From: Schizochytrium sp. TIO01
Taxonomy: Eukaryota; Protista; Bigyra: Labyrinthulomycetes
Assembly: GCA_004764695.1 (NCBI GenBank)
Contig: SMSO01000032.1
Span: forward strand, 1,364,001 to 1,428,000
Reading direction: 5' to 3'
DNA: 64,000 bases
The notes under the pieces were generated by a model. The model was not told where the DNA came from, made no database searches, and worked only from the letters and a program-made list of their open reading frames with translations. A program made the position numbers and the translations under genes. Of the stretch, positions 29,089 to 41,802 are shown in pieces. How positions within the stretch are numbered: the stretch's first letter is position 1; each line of letters begins with the position of its first letter.

Positions 29089-29967
29089 ATGAGCGATCAA
29101 CAAGCAACAACTAGTGCTACTGAGGCAGAAAAATGGCAAGATAAATCCCAGGGCATGGAGGAAGGTGCCACTGTTGTGAATGCAGCAGAGGAAGATGTCG
29201 AGGACGAGGAGGATGATTACATGGCTGGGGGTCTAGAGTTTGTATTCCAAGATTGGCTTGACCCGCAGACATTCACGTGTCACTCGGCAGACACATTCTC
29301 TCTACTTGATGTGGAAGTACAGCAGGGCACGTTTTGCCACACCAAGGAGAACGATCAAACAGGGGCTGTCGTATGGGACGATGCTGTGATGCTAGCCCGT
29401 CATATGGTGAACAAATTCGGAAAGGAGCTGCAAGGCCAGCGGGTGGTCGATCTGGGTGCGGGAACCGGATTTCTTGGCCTTACAGTAGCCCGGGGCTGCG
29501 GAGCGAATGTGGCTATCACAGATCGTGACGTTATGAAAGATCTTATTGAACGCAATATTGATTTAAACAAAGACGGTATTACACAACAGGGCGGAAATGC
29601 CAGCTTTTTTGACCATTCATGGGGCGAAGATCTTGATCCAGAGATGGCTAAAATGTTACCTTTTCACGTCGTGTTGTGCAGTGGATGCATTTACCACGAG
29701 GAAGCAAATCCAGCTCTTTTGAAATCCTTAAGGGTATTGTCAGGCTGTACTGGTGACATTTATGTTGCGATTGACTTTCGATTTGATGTGACTATTCAAG
29801 CTGAAGACGAACAATATGCTGCACCTGTGGTTGCCTCATTCCTAGAACAAGCTCAAGAAGCTGGCCTTGACCTCCAGGAGTTGAGTGCAGAAGGTGGTGA
29901 GCTTGTGCTGGAGCCTTCCCAGGTGAAAAAATCGGTAAAGATTTTTAAAGGTCACTTTATTAACTGA
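29089..29967 (+). CDS. Seven-beta-strand SAM-dependent protein methyltransferase, family 16 (METTL21/EEF1AKMT-like)
   Basis: TGAVVWDDAVMLA pre-motif; motif I VVDLGAGTG; post-I ITD; SWG; motif II/post-II VVLCSGCIY; acidic N-terminal extension. Confidence 0.9.
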   Translation: MSDQQATTSATEAEKWQDKSQGMEEGATVVNAAEEDVEDEEDDYMAGGLEFVFQDWLDPQTFTCHSADTFSLLDVEVQQGTFCHTKENDQTGAVVWDDAVMLARHMVNKFGKELQGQRVVDLGAGTGFLGLTVARGCGANVAITDRDVMKDLIERNIDLNKDGITQQGGNASFFDHSWGEDLDPEMAKMLPFHVVLCSGCIYHEEANPALLKSLRVLSGCTGDIYVAIDFRFDVTIQAEDEQYAAPVVASFLEQAQEAGLDLQELSAEGGELVLEPSQVKKSVKIFKGHFIN

Positions 29968-30438: not shown

Positions 30439-32239
30439 TTATTCGTCACTGCACGACACAGCATCAGCGCGACACTGCGTCTTACACGCCTTGTATTCAG
30501 TACGGCTGAGAAGGCTGGAGCAGCTTTCTTCAATGCAGGTGTCCACCTCAATTTTGCATGTAAGAGCAGCTTCAAGCTTGTCAGCGCACGTTCCGAGGCT
30601 ATCAGCATTCTCGCTCAGACAAGATATACATTCCTCAGCAGTAGTGCTGTTGAAGCTCCTACGCATGTCACAGACACTGCAGGTTTCTACAATCTCCGTA
30701 GCACAAGTAGAGTTCACACCAGGGATCTTTACCTTGTTATGCTTTCCAAGATGACGCCCTTTGCCATGACCGCTGCCGGTAGAGTTGTGGCTGCCTGTGA
30801 AATTATGGTGTCCCCCCAAATTGGAGGAATCATCGTCATCAACAGTTTGATTACCATGTCCTCCAAACTTGCCAAGGTTACGGCCCTTGCCATGGCCAGG
30901 GCTAGTGGTAGAGTTGTGGCCTTCAGTAGCGTTATGGTAGTGATCAGGCAGATCGGTGGCGTTGTGAGTCATGTTGAAACCATGATGAGCATCGCCATTG
31001 TTACGAAGGTGGCGCCCCTTGCCATGTCCATGGCCAGTTGAGTTGTGGCTTCCGGTATAGTTGTGGCTTCCGGTGTAGTTGTGGTCAGGCAGGACGGTGG
31101 CGTTGGGGTAGTGGTCAGGCAGATCGGTAGCGTTATGGGTCATGTTGAAACCATGGTGAGCACCGCCATTGTTACGAAGGTGGCGCCCCTTGCCATGTCC
31201 ATGGCCAGTTGAGTTGTGGCTGCCAGTAAAGTTGTGGCTGCCAGTGAAGTTGTGGCCCTCAGTAGCGTTGTGGTAATGATCAGGCAGATCGGTAGCGTTG
31301 TGAGTCATGTTGAAACCATGGTGAGCACCGCCATTGTTACGAAGGTGGCGTCCCTTGCCATGTCCATGGCCAGTTGAGTTGTGGCTGCCAGTAAAGTTGT
31401 GGCTGCCAGTGAAGTTGTGGCTGCCAGTGAAGTTGTGGCTGCCAGTGAAGTTGTGGCTGCCAGTGAAGTTGTGGCTGCCAGTGAAGTTGTGGTAATGATC
31501 AGGCAGATCAGTGGCATTATGAGTCATATTGAAACCGTGGTGAGCACCGCCATTTTTACGAAGGTGACGACCATAGTTAGAATCGGAGCCATGACCATTG
31601 GAGCTTCCTCCATGGCCTCCATCTTGGCTACCATTGTCCAACGACGTACAAGAAGTAGCATTTGCACGACACTCACTTTTGCACATGGCAAGCTGCACAC
31701 CGTCAAAGCCCAGACACAAAGTGTCAACACAGTCTGCAAGCTCAGTCGCACACGAAAGCTTGTCAACAAGGGCGTCAGTGCAGCCAGCAAGGCTGTCTGC
31801 ATTCTCCAAGAGGCATTCAAGGCAGGTTGCTGCATTAGTTGAGTTCATATCCTTGACCTCGCAAGTTTCACATGTATCAATTATCTCTTGGGCGCAAGTA
31901 GTGTTAACTCCAGATGGAACATGGCCTCCAATTGTTTTGTTAGGGCACGATGTTGCATTCTGGTAGCACTCTTGAGCACACGAGAGGACTCGACCGTTGC
32001 CGGGGAGACTCTTGCAGCTCTCTTCCATACATGTTTCGACCTCTACGAAACACTCGACCTCGGCAAGCTGATCTTCAACACAGTCGCCGAGGTCATCAAT
32101 ATTATTTTCGAGACAGTCTACGCAATCCTCCCAGTTAGTCAGATTTGCGTAATGGTGGAAGGTGCAGACATCACCACAAACCTCTTCGACAAGCTCAATG
32201 CAGGTGTTATTTCCAGTTGAAGGCATACCAGAGCCGTGG

Positions 32240-32270
<31 letters not shown>

Positions 32271-32490
32271 CGTGGCCAGAGCTTGGGCCTCCAAAGTTGT
32301 TGCCTCCATTATTACCTCCTGTATTTCCATTCGAAGGAGTGGAACCTCCAAAGTTGTTGCCTCCGTGCTGCTGATTACCACCATCATTGGTAGGGCCGGA
32401 GGATTGGAATCCACCGCTTGACCGAGCTTCTGCTGAGCTCGCAGCACTTGCTGCAAGGACCGCCAAGGCCCACAAGGTCTTGATTTGCAT
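30439..32490 (-). CDS. Secreted glycoprotein/polyprotein: signal peptide, G/N/S-rich leader, two 12-Cys domains, RHLR-punctuated His/N-sequon repeat array, third 12-Cys domain
   Basis: ATG at 32490 starts a clear signal peptide (MQIKTLWALAVLAASAASSAEA); the ORF track uses an upstream TTG at 32514. Cys domains at 31945-32202, 31648-31896 and 30451-30705; repeat array 30745-31569. No TM or GPI tail seen. Confidence 0.9.
30745..31569 (-). repeat. Intragenic nested tandem repeat: five units of 42-73 aa with an internal 18-bp (HNFTGS)n minisatellite
   Basis: Unit starts (RHL/RNL) at 31569, 31350, 31185, 31014 and 30882, with a closing RHL at 30756. Six tandem 18-bp copies at 31384-31491. Confidence 0.97.
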
Positions 32491-33399
32491 GGTTGGTCTT
32501 TTAAGCTCTGACAATCTCAGGTAATTAGGTTTTGCTTATACAGGTTCTTGAATTTTTCTACCTTGAACTCCGTATCAAATTCTGCCCAAGTTTTATCAAG
32601 GGACTATGCAAGCAAGCAAGCAAGCAAAGCCCGCCAGCCAGCCAGAAAGCCAACTAATTAAATTTCTTCGTTTCGACTTGGCCGAGTTTGGTGTTTGTTG
32701 GAGTTCGGGTTTTGTTTGTTTCCTCGCGCTCTGTTCCTCCATTTTTTTTTTTTAAATAATCATTTTTTATTTTTTTAAAGTTCCTCCTTAAGAGCCGCAT
32801 CTCTTTCTTCCGTCGCTTTTGCGCCCTCTCTTGCTATCTCCTGCAGCGCGTGAATCCTCTAAAAACCCGGAATTGCGTTAGGTTCTTCCTCCCTCTACTA
32901 CGAAATCATACTCTAGAGGTATATTATATGTTATATAACACTTGTTTCTACCTTTTTCGTTTTTTTTATTAAAATTTTAAAGATGATTAAAAACTTTTAA
33001 GAGCCTTGAAGAATTCCAGCATCGGCACTCTTGTGTAAACCAGCCAGCACTCCCTTTGCCCGACCCTAGCTTCTTTCCCTCGCGCAGCCTCATACCTCGC
33101 CCGTCCCTGCATCAATTACAGAGGTGGTCGGATAAGCCGCAGTCCGATTTGATTCTTGCGCTGCCAGCAGGCCTTCATTCGGAGCCACTTTCTCTCAACT
33201 CGCCAAGGACGGAGCCTTCTCCTTCTTTCTCTCTTCCTTCGCAAATAACTCGTCTCTTCAACAACTCCCTTATCTAACCGTAGATAAATGTTACAGTCGT
33301 TTTGTTTTATTTCATCTTATTCTATTTCAAATGTTATTCCAAAGTATCAAAACTTAAAAAAACAAAATGTTTTAAAAACAAACAAATACTTTATTCAAA

Positions 33400-34428
33400 C
33401 TCCAAAGAGCCTGCGTGACACCCACGGTAGGTCTCCACTGAAAATATCGCTCCCGGCTTCAGGGGGGGGGGGGCAGCAGCCGCCTTGCGATCATGAGGGG
33501 ACTCATGGCATGCGTCTTGAGGTGTTCCGAAGGTGCTGTAACTTAGGAAGAGAGGAAGTAAACGAGGAGGAAGCAGGTGCTATCTATGGCGCTAGCCAAC
33601 TGCTAGGCCGTTCCAGCTTGTTGGCAAATGCTGTTTCTTCTCTGCGTTTTGGCGAATCGGTTTCGTGGTTCATGATTTGGCGGTGGAGTTGGAAACGAGG
33701 AATTGGAAACGTGGATTTGCGCGACGTCTAAAGAGTCGCGCAAATTGATCATCTTCCGCCCGCGAGGGTCTACCCGCAGCCACAGCAGACAATCGATTTT
33801 CAATGAATCAATCATTCACTGCATGTCATCCGAAGAGATCGATCGAGCTTCGAGCTTCTTTGTCCTTCTGCACCGTAGCTTGGTCCCAGAACTGATGGTC
33901 AATCAATCGACCACTCTCGTTCCCAATCTCTTCCTCAAAGTTTGTGCCGCTGACACACATTCGTGTTCACATACACATAAAAATACACATACACAGACAG
34001 ACATCGGGCGCGTCTAGAGCATGGATTGGCCAGCCAAGAGTCCTGGGCGGCGAATACCTCAAATCCGCGAGAGGAGGCTTGAGATGGTGGCGAGAGAGTC
34101 GTTCGAGATCTCAAGTACCTGCAGGCAGCCATGTAAGTAAGTAAGGTAAGTAAGTAAGTCGCCTCGCTTGAGCTGCGAGCGTCCAACTTTAACGTCACAT
34201 CTCCGCTGCCAACGCGGGAAAGCCAACAACCCAAACGCGGCGCAGCTCAGCGGCAGATCAACTGTCTATCCTATCTCTCAATCTCTCTCTATCTCTATGT
34301 ACAACCATTGCTCCGCACTGCATTCTGAATTCTGCCTCCGGAACTCTTTTTCCAAGAAAAACACAGCTTCTTGGAAGAAAAAAAAAAAAACAAAAAACCT
34401 TTTTCGTAAAGATAGATAGATAGATAGA

Positions 34429-34463
<35 letters not shown>

Positions 34464-37400
34464 ATACGCATAGATCACCTCTATCTAACCAATCAGAAGT
34501 CCGGGAGGCAAATAAACAGAAGAATGGCAAAGCATCACTCATAACGCACGTTGACCGAAGTCATCTGAAGTATCGTATCCCGTTCTTCTCAGTTTAGAAT
34601 CCTATCCATCTGGTTCAGCTTACCGGAGGCTCTTCACAACCGAGACGAGTCTTTACACTCGTGCCCTCGTCATCAGCGGTGATTATCACTCACTGCCGTC
34701 GTGGTCCGAGCTCTCTGAGCCTTCTTCGCGCTCTTCTTCTCTGCTATGCTTGGCCTTCGTTCTTGCTCGCACCGGCTTAACAAGGCACGCAGCCGTGAGG
34801 AGGCCACCGCGGCCTCTATCTCTGGTTTTCATTTATTCATGGCGCGCGAGCGGAGGTTTCCGGTGGAGTGCAACAATAATCCGAAGTTCTTCTTGTAAGA
34901 GCGAATCCTCAGTTAGTTAGTTAGTTAGTTCGTCCATTTGTCTATGAATTCGTTCTTATCGATGGGTTCATGAACGAATGAGGAGAGAGTGAACTGCGAT
35001 GGGTGCTCCTCTGCTGTGTCCATCGCCACCACTTTGGCATCGACTTGAGACTTTTAGCTCGAACAGTATCCTGCCGCCAGGCATCTTTGCCTCGAGATTT
35101 CTCCTAATTCAAGTCGGTCAAGGCAGTCGGCACTCCTCTATCTGTTTGTTCTTCATCTCCGCACTCATGCAGCAACAGCTTTCGCTATCTGTTGTTGTTG
35201 TTGTTGCTGTTGTTGCCGTGGTTGTTGCCGTGGTTGTCGGCTAAGGACAAGGAAGGGTGGATTTCTGGCCAACTGGAAACAGACATTTATTCATAAAGGA
35301 AGCATTTCTGTACCCAAAGCCCCAAATCTTATTGAGAAATCCCTCCTGCGACTCATTGATTGATTGATTGATTCATTGATTGATTCATTGGCTCCATGCA
35401 AATCCGTGTTCCAATATGTTCATTCCTCATCCCGTACCATTCCATGCTCTTACTACCTACACATGCATCCGCTCCGCTGCCTTCTATCCTCTCGGCTACT
35501 CTTCTCCTACGAGTCCTTCCCCTGGAACACCTGGATCGCCAGTTCATGCACAGAGCCCGCCGAACTCAGTTGCTCCTGACAGACACGCCACTCCCACCCT
35601 CGGCCTGTTCTTCCCCTTGGGGTGACGGCGCGCTAAGAGGTCCTAGGCAGCTCGCTTTCCAGGTTCTCGCAAACTAACCCCTCTTCGGGTTCCCCTCCGC
35701 TGCTTTCGGAGCTTTGGTCTCTTTTTATTTAGTTTTACAAACAAATGACTTTTTATTTCCAATTAATTAATTAATTACTTACTTATAAATAGATAAATAA
35801 ATAAATAAATATAAATACCAATTTTAAAAAATGAAGTAAAGATAGAGATGAAGGAAGATAAGAGGAGATAGATAGATTGATTGACTGGAGAAAAGAAAAG
35901 GAAAGAATCTCTCTCGGTTCGCTTCATGAGTTTGTTTCTGACCTTCTTCGGGTTTCGAGCTTCGTTGCAAAGTGAGTTCGAGCGAACGATGTGAAGGCGT
36001 GCAAGGGGGAGAGGGAGGGCTTTCTATCGAGCTCAGCTGCAGCTGTTCTGAATATGGGCCTGGAAATGCATAAATAAATAAATCCAAAGCTCAAGAACTC
36101 AACTTCTTTCCCTTTCCCGCACATCCTCGGAGTCGTTTGAGACTCTCTCTCTCTCTCTCTCTCTCTCTGTGAGTGAGTATGTGTGTGTGCGTTTTTGTCT
36201 CATGCATCATCGTCTTTTCAAGAGCGCCGAATTCTCGCCAGCAAAGCTTTGCATTTGCGGGCGGTGGAGCAAAGCCTGCGTCAACGGGAACCCTGCGCAG
36301 GCGGCGTCTCGGTCTCTGGGTGGGTCGTCTCTGCCGACGTCGCGCCGATGAGATGACAGTTCCTGCTCCTTGCCGGGCTGGCGGAGCTGCAAGGGCGGAG
36401 CCGCCGTCAGCTCAGAAGAACGAACTGCAAGATGCGCTGGAGAAAGGCCACTAAGTCCACCCGCGAGATATTCTCTGCGCTGCCGATGCTTCAAGAACGA
36501 ACGATGGAGAGAGAGAGAGAGAAAGAGAACCTCTGCGCGCTCCTTGCCTGAGTGCATCCGTAAGCGGGCGGTGGACCTGAGAAGGAGGGCTTAGCAAGTG
36601 CAATCTGCTCTTCTTTCGTCGTCGCTCAGGGCCTTTGGCTGCAGGCATACCTGCGAACTTGCCTTGGAAACTGTGCTGCTTTGATAACGATGAGAGATGG
36701 GATAGATATTCCATCGAGCTGTTACGAACTGATTCATGAGCGAGTTTGTGCCCAGAAAGCCTGAGGGAGATCTATCTCGCTCCGCATATGCAGTGCGGCC
36801 TCGAGAAGACCAGTGCGAAGGTGGTTCTATCGAATTTGCGGCGTGCACTCGTGTGAACGTCTTCAGTTCAAAGTCGCCTTGCTATCAACCGATCCAAACT
36901 ATATGCATACGTGAGACGAAGCGAATTATGTCTTGTCAACCCTCGTGAACAAGGGCGCCACAGCCAGGGCAGTTCAGGACTCTCTTTGTGCTTGCTCTCA
37001 AGCCGAGCTGTCTCCTGTTTCCGTGGCTCTGGAACTCGTGGAACCTTTGGGTTCAGGCATAGAATATCCCGCGCCTAATGAACAGCAAGTTCCAAACCTG
37101 TCCAACTATCGAATCAACGCTATGATGAAAACGACCGCAAGGCTTGATTCCCCAAACACGAGCGTCAGCCAGCATTAATAGTTATCGAGCCGGTCAGTCG
37201 TGGCCGACGAGAACACTGAAGCGAATGGATTATAAGAAGTTTGTCTCAACTAATCAACCGAAGAATAGTTATAATTATAAGCAATTCTTGACTTACAGCG
37301 ACCCCAACTACTTTGTACAACCCAAACATTATGTCTGTATCACACTACTCTTCCGCTCGCCTCCATTCCTCAACTGATTACTGCAGACCATTTGGAGGCC

Positions 37401-37500
37401 TCATGGAGAAAGTGTCAACATTGTTCAACTCCAAAACATCCCGCCCCTTTACTTTCCTCGCATCTGCGTAAACAAACATCATTATCGCGCCTGCACCATC
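33400..37500 (+). pseudogene. Patchy TPR relics overlaid by microsatellites
   Basis: 33537-33587 CNLGREEVNEEEAGAIY; 34037-34069 RVLGGEYLKSA; 37026-37052 ALELVEPLG followed by EYP…NLSNY. Confidence 0.42.
34411..34465. repeat. Compound microsatellite (GATA)n(AATA)n
   Basis: Directly visible. One of many simple repeats in 33-37.6 kb: (GTAA)n ~34133, (GTTA)n ~34911, (ATTG)n ~35355, (CT)n ~36144, (CATT)n ~37557. Confidence 0.95.
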
Positions 37501-37599
37501 TCTCTCTTTTACCCGCGGCTTTGCATCCGATCGTCCATCTCTAGCGCGTATTTATTCATTCATTTATTCATTCATTCATTCATTCATTCATTCTCTGAA

Positions 37600-40500
37600 A
37601 ATTGCTCCGCGTGGTTTTGTGAAAGACCTTTTGCATGCGCAGGTGGGGACAGGCTTAACCTGTCCAGGTCGGAGAAGTGATTGCCAGAGAAAAAAAGAAG
37701 AATCTGTCAAGGCAGTACTAAAGTATTGGTTAAATGCGGCTAGTATGGCCAAGTGACTCAATCCTGGGTCCTGTAGATGGAATAGATGGAATGCCAATTG
37801 CTGTAGAAAAGCATTGGCGTGGCCTACAGCAATTGGCATGGCCTACTATGAGGCCTCTATTCGATGGGAAGACAGAAGTTTTGGAAGAACCACGGTGGAC
37901 ATTACATAATTTTGAGCGAGCAATATTTCAAGTATCGCGAGGCAACGCAGATTGTTGGAGGCTGGCTATAAGCCACAAAAACTCTTTCCACAAGTGAAAG
38001 AAGTGCCATGATGGGCTTTGGACACTACCGAGTACTATCTTTAAAATCAAAATCAGGCTTGCATTGAGTCTAGTAGAAAGTTAACTCACCATAAGGTATA
38101 CCTTCTCATACATACTATGTCCTGAAACTCGTTGAACCGTTACCACCTGAGTCGGAAAATGCTCCCGGACTTTCTTAAAGTTGAGAAATATGCACAAACA
38201 TCTGAAACCACCACCGAAATACAAGCTGCACATTATTCAGGTACCGAGAGGCTCGAGCAAAACTTACTCCATGAGCTGGCAACTTGCTCTCTGAAGGTCT
38301 GCGGTAAAGAGGAAAGTGATGACGCTTTAGGTTTGTTAGAACGCACATCTATGCCTTTTGGTATGTGTGCCTGTTGCTCAATAGCGAGCGCGTGTATGCT
38401 ATGCTCCCTTTCCAGAAGAGAAACGGACAATCTGGTAGGTTGGCGACTAAGTGTGCCATATGTGCAAATGAAATGATACATCATTCCCGAAAGTTTTTCA
38501 AGCAAGTATGCCCAAAAGTGACTACTCCATATACAAAGACTCGAAGAGCCATGCCTCTATATGGAGTTGCCTAATGTTAAGCCTTCTTGCACTGTTTGCG
38601 TGCACATATTTGCAAACGCAGTTTCCCCCTTCAAGTAAACGAGTATTCTCTGCAGGTGCTCCTTCTTCCCCGCCAAGATCACTAGGAATTTACCAGATAC
38701 TAATAATCTGTTTCTTTAGAAAGATTCAGGGAAATCAAGGCGTGGGACAATTTATATATGCCGGCACAACAAACAAAGCTCTCGTTGCTGTCTGAAATGC
38801 ATTATGAACGCCAATGCTAATGATCAGGCAAATTGCCTTGCATTTAGCTTCTACATACCTACAAAGCATGACCTTATACTCATGCAAGCCAGGGATAATC
38901 TCTGCTCTTTGATCATGTGCTGTTGTGTAATGTTTCAAGAGTTCTAAACTAATGGAGAAAACGTTTCCCCGCTCTTTTCAATATGAATTGGTCGGGTGTT
39001 CATATGTATTCACATTTATGGGTTGAACTCAGTTTGAGACAAATACCGTGGCTTTGTTCAAAGTGCAAGATAACAGGAGCATTTCACCATACAACATATT
39101 TGGTTTTATCGCAATTAATTGCGCTACAATGATGTCTGAAATATGGAAAAGGTGCCAGCTACTGCTAATTCCATGTTGGCAACCTATTTATTCTGAAAGC
39201 CGAAGTTGATGTTTTCGGATGTGCTTGTGTAGATATTTTGTAGGAATCTGATACATCGTCCTCTGGCTCTATAATAAAATTCAACCATTAATGCTTGAAA
39301 ACGCATAAGAAAAGAACCTTTGTTCATACGCTTAGGTATGTGACTGTTATATGTGATGTTATTTATCTCGCCAGACTTTAGAACTGAGCTTATCAGTGAT
39401 TTTCAACAGGAACATCGTCCAAATATTCGTAAAACAGAACCAACCTTTGGACTACAGATGTACCTTCGAATTGCAACTTATCGTCTCGTGATGTACATCT
39501 GGGTAGGTAGTCACTCACTCCTGATTCGCGAGACAGATCACCACTCATGAACGTTGAGCATGCTTCAAGCGAAGAAGCTTGGAAAACGAAGCATTTGACA
39601 AGGCACATTGCCGCGTCAATTTAGTCTTTGGCTCATCTTGTAAGATTTTCCGAATAGGTACAGGGGACTATCTGAGGATGGATGGATGGAAGGAAGAGCT
39701 CTAAATGTACACCATCTAAAGGTTGTGCTCAGTATGGCGCAGCCTTTTCCGAACAATTACACTTCCCGCTCTTCCGGCGAATCCGTTTCAAATCCGTGCA
39801 TAGCCGATGCTCTGCAAAAGTGTAGACTTTCTGAACAAAATGGAGAATGGCACATCAAATTGATGCAGTTCTCAAACGAACCTTAAGCATAACTTGCACG
39901 TGGTCAGTCAAGATCCCCCACTACAGGAGCTCTTATAAAAAGGTCTTGACAAAGAAACTTGCGATCTTCCCTTACTCAAGCACGTGTTATACACAGCTAT
40001 ATACAAGAGCCTGCCAGTCTCCGAACCACTTTGAAAGAGGCAGCGTTTCTCTACGGACTATGCCTTCATTTGGAAATGAGTTTTCGAATGAAGCCTCTGA
40101 AACACCCCAGTGCGAACAGCACTTCCAGGCACTATGGTAGTGCAGGCGCAAAATATTGGTTACGATTACCAGGCTGGTTTCGCCGCTCGCACTCCACATC
40201 ATTCTCCACTTCCCTCGTGTAAGTAGGAAATAGGTATTCCCAGGAGAATGCCAATGCTTCGTGAATACCTTACCAACAGACGCTCGCTCATGCCTAGAAT
40301 TCAAAGGCGTTACAAGTGACCTTGCACCGGAGTAGGAAATGCCGACATGGTTACAAGACCTGCGTTCTTTTATTGGAGCGCTGCGCTAGAGCTCACGAGA
40401 CTGCGGAAGCTCATACACGATCTCGAGGCTGGTTTCACAGTGAGGTGTCCACGGAAAGGGAGTGTTGGTCACAAGAGACGACAACGGGAGGGTTCGCTTT

Positions 40501-40600
40501 TTAGATTGGCCACATATGCACGATGCAGGCTGACCACATCACAAGTCGCATCGCCAAGTCAGGTTCCACGATTGAAATGACTGAAACAGATTGCGAGATC
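37600..40600 (+). pseudogene. Decayed KLC-like TPR array, convergent with the 40909-41802 gene
   Basis: 37899-37944 TLHN/LSEQYFKYREA then LLE; ~38264-38343 LLHELATCSLKVCGKEESDDALGLLER; 40031-40111 LKEAAFLYGLCLHLE…KHPS; ~40368-40453 LLLERCARAHE…GWFHSEVST. Confidence 0.6.
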
Positions 40601-40908
40601 TTCCCAGGGCAAATTTTTGATGGGGCACAAGTGAAATCATACCTCATATGGCAGGATACAAGGGAATAGTGAAACGAAGGCACTGACTGATTGAGCAAGA
40701 TGGTCACGTGTACAAGGTTATGTATGATAAAACAAACGTGAAGAAGAAGCCAATGAATGACCAAAAGATTGTGAGTCGACTTATGTTCTGTTATATAGAT
40801 GGGCGCGATCAAATTACAGGTTGCATTGGATGGGGGATAAATCATGGTTGTGCGTGCTTAAGAGGCCCGTCTGAAGGGTGTGGATGGGGTTGGGGTGCTA
40901 GTTTACCA

Positions 40909-41802
40909 TTAGTTTCCGCGAAGACGGCGCTCAGAGCCAGTAGAGTAACTGTCAGTGGTGGAGTAGCCATCGCCGTCACAGTAGAGAGACTCACAGGCGT
41001 ATCCACAGGTAGAGTCCCAAGAGGTGGAGTTCATGCAGGTGGTGAGAAGGCACTCAACAAGGTCGTCCTCACTGCAGTCGCTGGAGCCGAAGCAGACGTC
41101 GAAAGAGTCATCCTGCTCGTCGAGGCAGTCACCACAGGCATCCATGTCATCAACAGTGGTGGCGTTGAGGCAGGATCCACAGGAGGTAGCAACAACCTCC
41201 TCAACGCAGGTGAGGTTGACACTGGAGGATCCGAGAGCGTCAGTGCGGTTGGAGGCAAGGGAGCTGTTGGTGTAGTTGGAGATGATCTCCTCAGCCTTGG
41301 TGCTCTCGTAGAGGTCCTCGTCCATGTCGCCGTCATCAAAGATCATGGCCGGGCAAGAGGATGTGTTGGCAATGCAAATGTTCACGCAGGTGTCAGCCTC
41401 GTCCCACTCGGTGGTGTTGCAGTTAGCAAGCACGCAGTCGGAGGCACCGTTGAAGCAGGCTTCGTCAATGGTGGTGGTGTTGATGCAGCTGAAGAAGGTG
41501 TCACGGTTGTTGTCGAGGCAGCTAAGACAGTCTCCGAGAAGAGCATCCTCCTGGAGGCAGGCATCAGAGCAGTTGTTGAGGAGAGCTGACTCGATACAGC
41601 TGGTGTTCCAGAACTCACTGGTGTCGTAAAGCTCCTCGTCAGAGGCCTCGAGCAAGCGAGTGTAGTTGGTGTAGTTGGAGTAGACTCCACCACAGTCGGT
41701 GGCGTTAGTGGAGTTCATGGCGCAGTCCAAATAGTAAGCCTGGACGCTGTGCACCATCTGGGTGAGGGCCACGACGGCGGCGAGTGCGAAGAACTTGGTC
41801 AT
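40909..41802 (-). CDS. Secreted acidic Cys-rich glycoprotein with two 12-Cys domains (paralog of the 30439-32490 gene)
   Basis: 297 aa. Signal peptide MTKFFALAAVVALTQMVHSVQA; short 2-Cys segment then RLL; 12-Cys domains at 41353-41598 and 40978-41208; ends in RRLRGN; strong preference for C-ending codons. Confidence 0.92.
   Translation of the reverse strand: MTKFFALAAVVALTQMVHSVQAYYLDCAMNSTNATDCGGVYSNYTNYTRLLEASDEELYDTSEFWNTSCIESALLNNCSDACLQEDALLGDCLSCLDNNRDTFFSCINTTTIDEACFNGASDCVLANCNTTEWDEADTCVNICIANTSSCPAMIFDDGDMDEDLYESTKAEEIISNYTNSSLASNRTDALGSSSVNLTCVEEVVATSCGSCLNATTVDDMDACGDCLDEQDDSFDVCFGSSDCSEDDLVECLLTTCMNSTSWDSTCGYACESLYCDGDGYSTTDSYSTGSERRLRGN

What the first reader, a model, noticed from the sequence alone, without database searches (positions are those of the whole stretch)
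30745..31569. RxLR-punctuated secreted polyprotein: a candidate multi-peptide precursor
Seen: six boundary motifs (RHLR x4, RNLG, RHLG; five preceded by GHGKG) delimit five His/Gly-rich peptides of 73, 55, 57, 44 and 42 aa and separate them from the flanking Cys domains. Established: RxL is the processing signal of diatom silaffin-type precursors, and RxLR is the cleaved motif of oomycete effectors. Inference: a stramenopile RxL-processed polyprotein releasing several His-rich glycopeptides plus free Cys domains, analogous to fungal KEX2-processed repeat proteins. Possible roles include cell-wall scale, ectoplasmic-net adhesive, metal binding or signalling.
Basis: partly seen in the sequence, partly recalled or inferred. 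Interest (0 to 1): 0.82.

Follow-up and report, generated by a model that had tools for sequence, protein, structure and literature searches.

The report
Secreted His-rich repeat protein, RxL-punctuated
A marine protist (thraustochytrid) gene missing from a large public protein collection encodes a secreted, sugar-coated, histidine-rich repeat protein with six conserved Arg-x-Leu motifs that look like the cutting signals diatoms and oomycetes use, but cutting is unproven and a role as binding patches fits about as well.

Summary
One intron-free minus-strand ORF (30442-32490, 683 aa) has a signal peptide, a Gly/Asn-rich stretch, two 12-Cys domains, a 314-aa His/Gly/Asn spacer and a third 12-Cys domain. 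Six G-R-[HN]-L-[RG] motifs sit at the stated coordinates, spaced 73/55/57/44/42 aa.

New evidence that the motif is functional:
- Repeat units differ at 26-58% of synonymous sites but only 1-8% of non-synonymous sites.
- G-R-x-L is all that survives in all six contexts.
- Every Arg of the spacer lies in a motif.
- Each motif sits in the only long gap (21-35 aa) of a dense N-glycosylation brush.
- The neighbouring paralogue and its Hondaea orthologue (40% identical) both end in an identical RRLRGN, 16-17 residues after their last Cys domain.

Cleavage itself is untested. The gene has no orthologue and is absent from the public protein sets searched, so its expression is unshown. The terminal RRLRGN releases nothing useful. 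RHLR/RRLR also fits a polyanion-binding XBBXBX patch, and the thraustochytrid wall is sulfated. No kexin/furin or site-1 protease was found; three membrane-anchored pepsin-type proteases exist.

Verdict: a real, unusual orphan glycoprotein. The RxL-polyprotein reading is plausible (about 0.4), not established.

The parts
30442..32490 (-). Gene A coding sequence (683 aa; stop at 30439-30441), apparently a single exon
   Evidence: ORF list. The ATG at codon 9 of the TTG-ORF leads straight into a signal peptide. No other copy of the repeat region exists in the genome.
32425..32490 (-). Signal peptide MQIKTLWALAVLAASAASSAEA
   Evidence: Read directly from the sequence: basic n-region, hydrophobic core (mean Kyte-Doolittle hydropathy +0.98) and an AEA cleavage box. 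No SignalP run was available.
32218..32424 (-). Gly/Asn/Ser-rich low-complexity stretch including (GS)n-GHGSG
   Evidence: 6-bp and 18-bp repeats at 32228-32282; predicted disordered.
31945..32202 (-). 12-Cys acidic domain A1 (net charge -18)
   Evidence: Cys spacing, alignment A1, profile hit E 3.5e-32. The AF2 model is all-helical with pLDDT 76. No Pfam family and no PDB fold match.
31648..31896 (-). 12-Cys acidic domain A2 (net charge -11)
30706..31647 (-). His/Gly/Asn-rich nested-repeat spacer (314 aa: 52 His, 30 N-x-S/T sequons, all 10 Arg inside the six motifs)
   Evidence: No homologue found: word search, own genome, metagenome scan.
31558..31569 (-). Motif 1: YG-RHLR-KN, 26 residues after the last Cys of domain A2
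31339..31350 (-). Motif 2: GHGKG-RHLR-NN
31174..31185 (-). Motif 3: GHGKG-RHLR-NN
31003..31014 (-). Motif 4: GHGKG-RHLR-NN
30871..30882 (-). Motif 5: GHGKG-RNLG-K (diverged unit)
30745..30756 (-). Motif 6: GHGKG-RHLG-K, 17 residues before the first Cys of domain A3
30451..30705 (-). 12-Cys acidic domain A3 (net charge -7); the protein ends 3 residues later
40909..41802 (-). Paralogous gene B (297 aa): signal peptide plus two 12-Cys domains. Its product is identical to a protein held by JGI, MMETSP, EukProt and Logan.
40912..40929 (-). C-terminal RRLRGN of gene B, 16 residues after its last Cys. It is identical in the Hondaea fermentalgiana orthologue GBG24577.1.

Best explanation
Gene A encodes a secreted, very heavily N-glycosylated modular glycoprotein of a thraustochytrid (shown or near-certain). 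It has two acidic, helical, six-disulfide 12-Cys domains at the N-terminal side and one at the C-terminal end. A disordered His/Gly/Asn spacer of nested repeats joins them. The spacer carries six copies of a selectively maintained basic motif, G-R-[H/N]-L-[R/G]-[K/N]. Each copy lies in a 21-35-residue window free of glycosylation sequons. The inferred mechanism is this. These windows are recognition sites for a secretory-pathway endoprotease with the R-x-L (cut after Leu) specificity documented in other stramenopiles (diatom silaffin/silacidin precursors, oomycete RXLR effectors) and in apicomplexans. The enzyme is probably one of the genome's three membrane-anchored pepsin-family proteases. 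Cutting would release five His-rich glycopeptides of 42-73 residues, an N-terminal fragment carrying domains A1-A2, and a small fragment carrying A3. At the acidic pH of the Golgi the 52 His would make the spacer polycationic. The peptides or the precursor could then bind the sulfated galactan of the wall scales, or metal ions. That last step is speculation.
For: - Architecture and exact motif positions.
- Selection: the repeat core has pS 0.26-0.58 against pN 0.014-0.08 (pN/pS 0.05-0.16, binomial P 1e-4 to 2e-3). The units are therefore old and their protein sequence is under purifying selection.
- Across all six contexts, including the diverged units 5 and 6 and the non-repeat context of site 1, only G-R-x-L is invariant.
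- All 10 Arg of the 314-aa spacer lie in the motifs. Each motif occupies the only long sequon-free gap of its unit (21-35 aa); all other gaps are 4-16 aa, mostly 4-10.
- The spacer is predicted disordered on the charge-hydropathy plot.
- A motif of the same form (RRLR-GN) lies 16-17 residues after the last Cys domain in paralogue B and in its Hondaea orthologue. It is 6/6 identical although the proteins are 40% identical and the linker before it has diverged.
- Precedent: Sil1p repeats R1-R7 end in RRIL/RRNL, which are removed from mature silaffins (PMC4557024). The RXL protease is unknown (PMC5525289). RXLR is cleaved after Leu, in disordered regions (PMC11754927).
- Candidate enzymes: four pepsin-family genes, three with a C-terminal membrane anchor. 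One matches plasmepsin V at E 5e-12 and one matches BACE2.
- Alternative convertases were not found: no kexin/furin P-domain, no MBTP1_N. The nine S8 ORFs scanned are S8 with or without a PA domain, and one more is TPPII.
Against: - There is no direct evidence of cleavage.
- Gene A is absent from the 15-billion-protein collection, which includes MMETSP transcriptome-derived and JGI models that do hold gene B. Expression is therefore unshown.
- No orthologue exists to test motif conservation.
- Purifying selection covers the whole ~33-residue block on both sides of the motif, not the motif alone.
- In gene B the conserved motif is at the very C-terminus. Cutting there would remove only three residues, so its conservation argues for some function but not for peptide release.
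- In P. infestans a second RXLR, lying in a structured region further from the signal peptide, was not cleaved.
- A protein with Cys domains at both ends also makes sense as an intact cross-linker.
- A related Logan protein (P0004: a Cys domain plus a His-rich tail) has no RxL in its tail.
Confidence: 0.4

Rival explanations
1. The protein is an uncleaved extracellular-matrix or wall cross-linker. It stays intact, with globular acidic Cys domains at both ends and an extended N-glycan 'bottle-brush' spacer. The bare K-G-R-H-L-R-K/N windows are basic binding patches (Cardin-Weintraub type X-B-B-X-B-X) for the sulfated galactan/xylan of thraustochytrid wall scales. The His residues add pH- or metal-switchable charge.
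For: - G-R-H-L-R-N/K in sites 1-4, and E/A-R-R-L-R-G in gene B and in Hondaea, fit X-B-B-X-B-X when His is counted as basic (read; the consensus itself is from general knowledge).
- The thraustochytrid wall consists of sulfated polysaccharide scales made in the Golgi (PMC11642839).
- A conserved basic tail at the C-terminus of gene B is natural for a binding patch.
- The two-ended domain layout suits a cross-linker.
- Glycan-free windows suit binding as well as cutting.
- The spacer holds 52 His.
Against: - Sites 5 and 6 (RNLG-K, RHLG-K) break the X-B-B-X-B-X pattern but keep R-x-L. The invariant Leu, in a spacer almost devoid of aliphatic residues, is not explained by charge binding.
- The Cardin-Weintraub consensus carries little information.
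- The Cys domains are strongly acidic, so they would repel a sulfated polymer.
Confidence: 0.3
2. R-x-L-R is a sorting or retention signal read by a luminal receptor. It would route these Cys-domain proteins into a particular secretory carrier, such as scale-forming Golgi cisternae or the bothrosome/ectoplasmic net. Cleavage would be incidental or would serve only for release.
For: - The motif is strictly conserved at the extreme C-terminus of gene B and its orthologue.
- The oomycete model has RXLR holding effectors to an unknown ER/membrane component until cleavage.
- Unchecked first-reader notes report RRxLRG-like C-terminal tails on other secreted proteins of this genome.
Against: - Six copies in one protein are unnecessary for sorting.
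- Genome pattern searches for RRLRGN-stop (4 hits against 5 control) and RRxLRG-stop (85 against 116 control) were at chance level. None of the 30 fetched RRxLRG-stop hits ends an ORF longer than 170 codons.
Confidence: 0.1
3. The motif has no function of its own. It is simply carried along in a tandemly duplicated low-complexity unit.
For: Sites 2-4 are nearly identical copies of a 165-bp repeat, and the conserved block is much longer than the motif.
Against: - G-R-x-L survives in three contexts where the flanks have diverged (sites 1, 5, 6), despite pS up to 0.58.
- The same motif form is conserved in the paralogue across genera.
- Its placement in the glycan-free gaps is systematic.
Confidence: 0.1

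Closest known systems
Diatom RXL-processed repeat precursors (Cylindrotheca fusiformis silaffin Sil1p; silacidin and cingulin precursors)
   Same: Both are stramenopile proteins with a signal peptide and a disordered, low-complexity, heavily modified repeat region. Each repeat unit ends in a basic R-x-L motif. The protease is unknown in both cases (PMC4557024, PMC5525289).
   Different: There is no sequence homology. The composition is His/Gly/Asn with N-glycan sequons, not Lys/Ser with phosphate and polyamine. The motif is G-R-H-L rather than R-R-I/N-L. Folded 12-Cys domains flank the repeats. The organism makes no silica. Cleavage is unproven here.
Oomycete RXLR effectors
   Same: The literal R-x-L-R tetrapeptide occurs in a disordered stretch of a secreted stramenopile protein. 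Cleavage after Leu tolerates variation at the fourth position, as in RNLG and RHLG here (PMC11754927).
   Different: In effectors the motif is single and lies within about 30-40 residues of the signal peptide. Here there are six copies, at 286 or more residues from the signal peptide. There is no EER motif and no Pfam-recognisable effector domain. This is not a host-translocated effector context.
Apicomplexan PEXEL/TEXEL substrates of plasmepsin V / ASP5
   Same: R-x-L is cleaved after Leu by a membrane-anchored pepsin-family protease in the secretory pathway. This genome has three such anchored proteases, and one matches plasmepsin V at E 5e-12.
   Different: The PEXEL consensus R-x-L-x-E/Q/D is not met: the fifth position here is K or N. 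PEXEL is N-terminal and single. Orthology of the protease has not been established.
Fungal KEX2-processed repeat proteins and neuropeptide-type polyproteins
   Same: The concept is shared: one secreted precursor with tandem peptide units separated by a short basic processing motif.
   Different: No dibasic KR/RR site occurs in the spacer. No kexin/furin P-domain was found in the genome. The units are glycosylated and 42-73 aa long.
Histidine-rich glycoprotein and Gly/His-rich structural or antimicrobial proteins (general knowledge, not tested here)
   Same: All are secreted, glycosylated His/Gly-rich tandem repeats whose charge and metal binding can switch with pH. The basic patches could bind sulfated glycans.
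   Different: No homology was detected. The sequon density (30 in 314 aa) and the 12-Cys end domains have no counterpart.

Membership tests
Diatom RXL-processed biosilica precursors (silaffin/silacidin type) | N-terminal signal peptide | tested here: met
   MQIKTLWALAVLAASAASSAEA at the first ATG. Judged by rule of thumb; no SignalP was available.
Diatom RXL-processed biosilica precursors (silaffin/silacidin type) | Repeat units each ending in a basic R-x-L motif | tested here: met
   Six G-R-[HN]-L at unit ends.
Diatom RXL-processed biosilica precursors (silaffin/silacidin type) | Proteolytic removal of the motif in the mature product | not testable with these tools
   Needs proteomics or blots.
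Diatom RXL-processed biosilica precursors (silaffin/silacidin type) | Lys/Ser-rich or acidic composition and association with silica | tested here: not met
   The spacer is G 19%, H 17%, N 13%, K 3%. Thraustochytrid walls are sulfated polysaccharide scales, not silica.
Oomycete RXLR effectors | RxLR within about 30-60 residues of the signal peptide, in a disordered region | tested here: not met
   The first motif lies 286 residues after the predicted signal-peptide cut. It is in a disordered region.
Oomycete RXLR effectors | Downstream EER motif and/or WY-type effector domain | tested here: not met
   No EER follows any motif, and no Pfam family matches.
KEX2/furin-processed polyproteins | Dibasic (KR/RR) or R-x-K/R-R sites at unit boundaries, plus a kexin/furin convertase in the genome | tested here: not met
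   No KR/RR occurs in the spacer. RHLR fits only the minimal R-x-x-R, and sites 5 and 6 lack the last Arg. PF01483 (P-domain) has no hit in the genome.
PEXEL/TEXEL substrates | R-x-L-x-[EQD] shortly after the signal peptide | tested here: not met
   The fifth residue is K or N at all six sites and the motifs are internal.
Site-1 protease (S1P/SKI-1) substrates, R-x-hydrophobic-x | R at P4 and an aliphatic residue at P2 in the substrate, plus an S1P homologue in the genome | tested here: inconclusive
   All six sites fit R-x-L-x (the consensus is from general knowledge). No MBTP1_N hit. Of the 15 S8 hits, one is TPPII; of the nine scanned ORFs seven have S8 plus PA domains and two S8 only; none has an S1P-like architecture. 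Four hits were not scanned. The absence test is weak.
Cardin-Weintraub polyanion-binding motif X-B-B-X-B-X | Sequence pattern | tested here: inconclusive
   Met by sites 1-4 (G-R-H-L-R-N/K, His counted as basic) and by gene B and Hondaea (x-R-R-L-R-G). Not met by sites 5 and 6. Binding itself cannot be tested here.

The most novel reading that the evidence does not exclude
R-x-L-directed endoproteolysis in the secretory pathway is an ancestral stramenopile (possibly SAR-wide) processing system, and it is also active in labyrinthulomycetes. This orphan gene would then be a natural six-site substrate producing a new class of His-rich N-glycopeptides for wall-scale assembly or metal handling. In genetically tractable Aurantiochytrium it could serve as a reporter to identify the RXL protease, which has remained unknown in diatoms and oomycetes.
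Probability: 0.3. Interest if true: 0.7.

Novelty: new variant of a known kind. Interest (0 to 1): 0.5.

Why it matters
The protease that cuts RXL in diatom cell-wall precursors and RXLR in oomycete effectors has not been identified (PMC5525289, PMC11754927). A thraustochytrid substrate with six spaced sites, in an organism said to be easy to grow and transform (my own knowledge, not checked here), would make that question directly testable. It would also show whether the pathway predates the split of the major stramenopile lines. Independently of cleavage, the gene is a first molecular candidate for the protein fraction of the little-studied thraustochytrid wall or ectoplasmic matrix. It combines an unrecognised 12-Cys helical domain, found only in Aurantiochytrium and Hondaea apart from two weak hits, with one of the densest N-glycosylation sequon arrays one is likely to meet. 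It appears to have been missed by the gene sets in the collection searched.

Tried and rejected
- Pfam on the whole protein, the five Cys domains, gene B, P0002 and P0004: nothing.
- Word-based homologue searches on the Cys-domain half and on the repeat half: nothing.
- ESM Atlas: no usable hit.
- Profile search of 1.84 billion representatives: only gene B, its Hondaea orthologue and four weak hits. Gene A itself is absent.
- Metagenome scan: the profile had no stretch conserved enough to search with, and the single-protein query found no relative.
- Foldseek and VIA-align against PDB with the Cys-domain model: only generic helical bundles, best Z 5.7.
- Kexin/furin as the protease was rejected: no P-domain and no dibasic sites.
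- Site-1 protease was not found. The long S8 ORF is tripeptidyl-peptidase II.
- A genome-wide C-terminal RRLRGN or RRxLRG tail class: pattern counts were at or below the reversed-pattern control, and the 30 inspected hits end only short ORFs.
- The second structure job was not used. A single-sequence model of an orphan spacer would be uninformative.

Full report
**What is there.** The finding lies inside one uninterrupted minus-strand ORF, 30439..32514. The first ATG is at codon 9. It opens a textbook signal peptide, MQIKTLWALAVLAASAASSAEA, so the coding sequence is 30442-32490 and the product 683 aa. In ORF numbering the layout is:
- signal peptide, residues 9-30;
- Gly/Asn/Ser-rich stretch, 31-99;
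- 12-Cys domains A1 (105-190) and A2 (207-289);
- a 314-residue His/Gly/Asn-rich spacer, 290-603;
- a third 12-Cys domain A3 (604-688), three residues before the stop.

The three Cys domains share one Cys spacing and are 29-38% identical.

**The observation.** A regex on the translation finds R-x-L-[RG] at residues 316, 389, 444, 501, 545 and 587. These correspond to window 31558-69, 31339-50, 31174-85, 31003-14, 30871-82 and 30745-56. They read RHLR four times, then RNLG and RHLG. The last five are preceded by GHGKG. The spacings are 73/55/57/44/42 residues. Tandem Repeats Finder reports a 165-bp period (3.1 copies, 88% matches) with nested 18-bp arrays encoding HNFTGS. None of 20,000 shuffles gives six such motifs. 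Because the copies come from tandem duplication, that number alone means little.

**Is the motif more than a passenger of the repeat?** Four results say yes.
- The 31-codon core shared by units 1-4 differs at 26-58% of synonymous sites but only 1.4-8% of non-synonymous sites. The pN/pS ratio is 0.05-0.16 and the binomial P is 1e-4 to 2e-3. The units are old and their protein sequence is under purifying selection. The HNFTGS arrays, in contrast, are recent (18-bp period, 97% matches).
- When all six contexts are lined up, only G-R-x-L is invariant. This includes the diverged units 5 and 6 and site 1, whose upstream flank is not repeat.
- All ten Arg of the spacer lie in the motifs. The spacer carries 30 N-x-S/T sequons, mostly 4-10 residues apart and at most 16. 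Each motif sits in the one long sequon-free gap of its unit, 21-35 residues. That gap is a bare window in a glycan brush.
- The spacer falls on the disordered side of the charge-hydropathy plot.

**Relatives.** Pfam finds nothing in the protein or its domains. A profile of five domain copies finds only those five in the 64-Mb genome: three in this gene and two in a neighbouring gene B at 40909-41802(-). The same profile was run against 1.84 billion representative proteins. It finds gene B itself (P0001, held by JGI, MMETSP, EukProt and Logan), one Hondaea fermentalgiana protein (GBG24577.1, P0002), and four weak hits. Gene A is not in that collection at all. Its repeat region has no relatives in the word search, the genome or the metagenome scan. 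Neither transcript-like contigs nor a sampled-proteome test could be obtained.

**The most informative comparison.** Gene B and the Hondaea protein are orthologous over their last two domains at 40% identity. Both end in exactly RRLRGN, 16-17 residues after the last Cys, while the linker just before it has diverged. In gene A the first RHLR-KN lies 26 residues after the last Cys of A2, which is an equivalent position. A motif of the form R-x-L-R-x-N after the Cys-domain pair therefore likely predates the A/B duplication, and it has been kept across genera. This is good evidence for a functional motif. It does not favour the polyprotein reading specifically, because cutting gene B there would release only three residues.

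**Mechanism.**
- Sil1p repeats R1-R7 end in RRIL/RRNL, which are missing from mature silaffins. RXL motifs close repeats in other diatom wall proteins as well (PMC4557024).
- The RXL protease is unknown (PMC5525289).
- In P. infestans, RXLR is cut after the Leu. The fourth position varies among oomycetes. Cutting was seen only in disordered regions near the signal peptide (PMC11754927).

All six sites here satisfy R-x-L in a disordered, glycan-free window.

On the enzyme side, the genome shows no kexin/furin P-domain and no MBTP1_N. Of its 15 S8 hits, the one long ORF is tripeptidyl-peptidase II. The nine other ORFs scanned carry S8 with or without a PA domain. It has four pepsin-family genes, and three of them have a C-terminal membrane anchor. 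One matches plasmepsin V at 5e-12 and another matches BACE2. This is permissive evidence, not proof.

I therefore take R-x-L endoproteolysis of a secreted precursor as the single most likely mechanism, at about 0.4.

**The main rival (about 0.3).** The protein may stay whole. Acidic Cys domains at both ends (net charge -18, -11 and -7) and a glycan-brush spacer suit a matrix cross-linker. G-R-H-L-R-N/K and x-R-R-L-R-G fit the X-B-B-X-B-X polyanion-binding pattern, a consensus known from general knowledge. The thraustochytrid wall is made of sulfated galactose/xylose polysaccharide scales assembled in the Golgi (PMC11642839). Against this rival, sites 5 and 6 break the basic pattern but keep R-x-L, and the invariant Leu is unexplained by charge.

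**Minor rivals.**
- A sorting or retention signal (0.1). Pattern searches for RRLRGN-stop and RRxLRG-stop across the genome were at control level, and the 30 hits inspected end only short ORFs.
- No function at all (0.1).

**The Cys domain.** AlphaFold2 on the five-sequence alignment gives an all-helical model with pLDDT 76. Neither Foldseek nor VIA-align finds a specific PDB match; the best is Z 5.7, among generic helical bundles. It remains an unrecognised domain.

**Earlier notes.** These notes are unchecked and come from the same kind of reader. I treat them as leads only. The one I could partly test (C-terminal RRxLRG tails) was not supported by the pattern search as I ran it.

**Verdict.** The gene is a real, unusual orphan glycoprotein with a selectively maintained R-x-L motif. 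The polyprotein interpretation is plausible and directly testable, but it is not established. It is best filed as a possible new variant of the stramenopile RXL-processed repeat precursors. It is not a member of the silaffin, RXLR-effector, PEXEL or KEX2-substrate families. Interest is 0.5.

Noticed in passing
window 40909-41802 (-), residues 49-53 of gene B: Gene B has T-R-L-L-E-A about 27 residues after its predicted signal-peptide cut. This is a PEXEL-like R-x-L-x-E near the N-terminus. The Hondaea orthologue has no counterpart there, so it may be chance.
   Followed up: partly
window 30442-32490 (-): Gene A is absent from the 15-billion-protein collection, while the neighbouring gene B is held there by JGI, MMETSP, EukProt and Logan. 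The tandem repeats may have broken earlier assemblies or gene models, or the gene may be silent in culture.
   Followed up: partly
window 29089-29967 (+): The ORF converging on gene A's 3' end is a Methyltransf_16 lysine methyltransferase (Pfam E 1e-26). It has no signal peptide, so it is probably unrelated to gene A.
   Followed up: partly
window 33732-40707: About 7 kb between genes A and B holds no ORF of 120 aa or more on either strand. It could be spliced genes, non-coding DNA or decayed sequence. I did not examine it.
   Followed up: no
G000 C13:697000-768500 (loci L018-L020, L024-L026, L031-L032): A cluster of at least seven subtilase (S8) genes lies within about 70 kb. Three were scanned and have S8 plus PA domains. 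Four of the ORFs end in a Cys-rich ...RCC tail.
   Followed up: partly
L010 (C30:3.118 Mb), L012 (C32:1.128 Mb), L013 (C24:1.736 Mb): Three of the four pepsin-family proteases carry a C-terminal membrane anchor. The L013 ORF is 952 aa with a long acidic extension, and it matches plasmepsin V (4zl4) at E 5e-12.
   Followed up: partly
P0004 (Logan assembly, 194 aa): A protein from an unnamed sample has a signal peptide, one 12-Cys domain of the gene-A type, a His/Pro-rich stretch and an acidic tail. It is the only other case of this domain joined to a His-rich region, and it has no RxL.
   Followed up: partly
P0006 (Creolimax fragrantissima, 254 aa): A weak profile hit (E 4.7e-4) in an ichthyosporean protein with four repeats of a C..TCGG.C...C..TC..N.D.LQ.C module. 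This may be convergent or a very distant relative of the 12-Cys domain.
   Followed up: no
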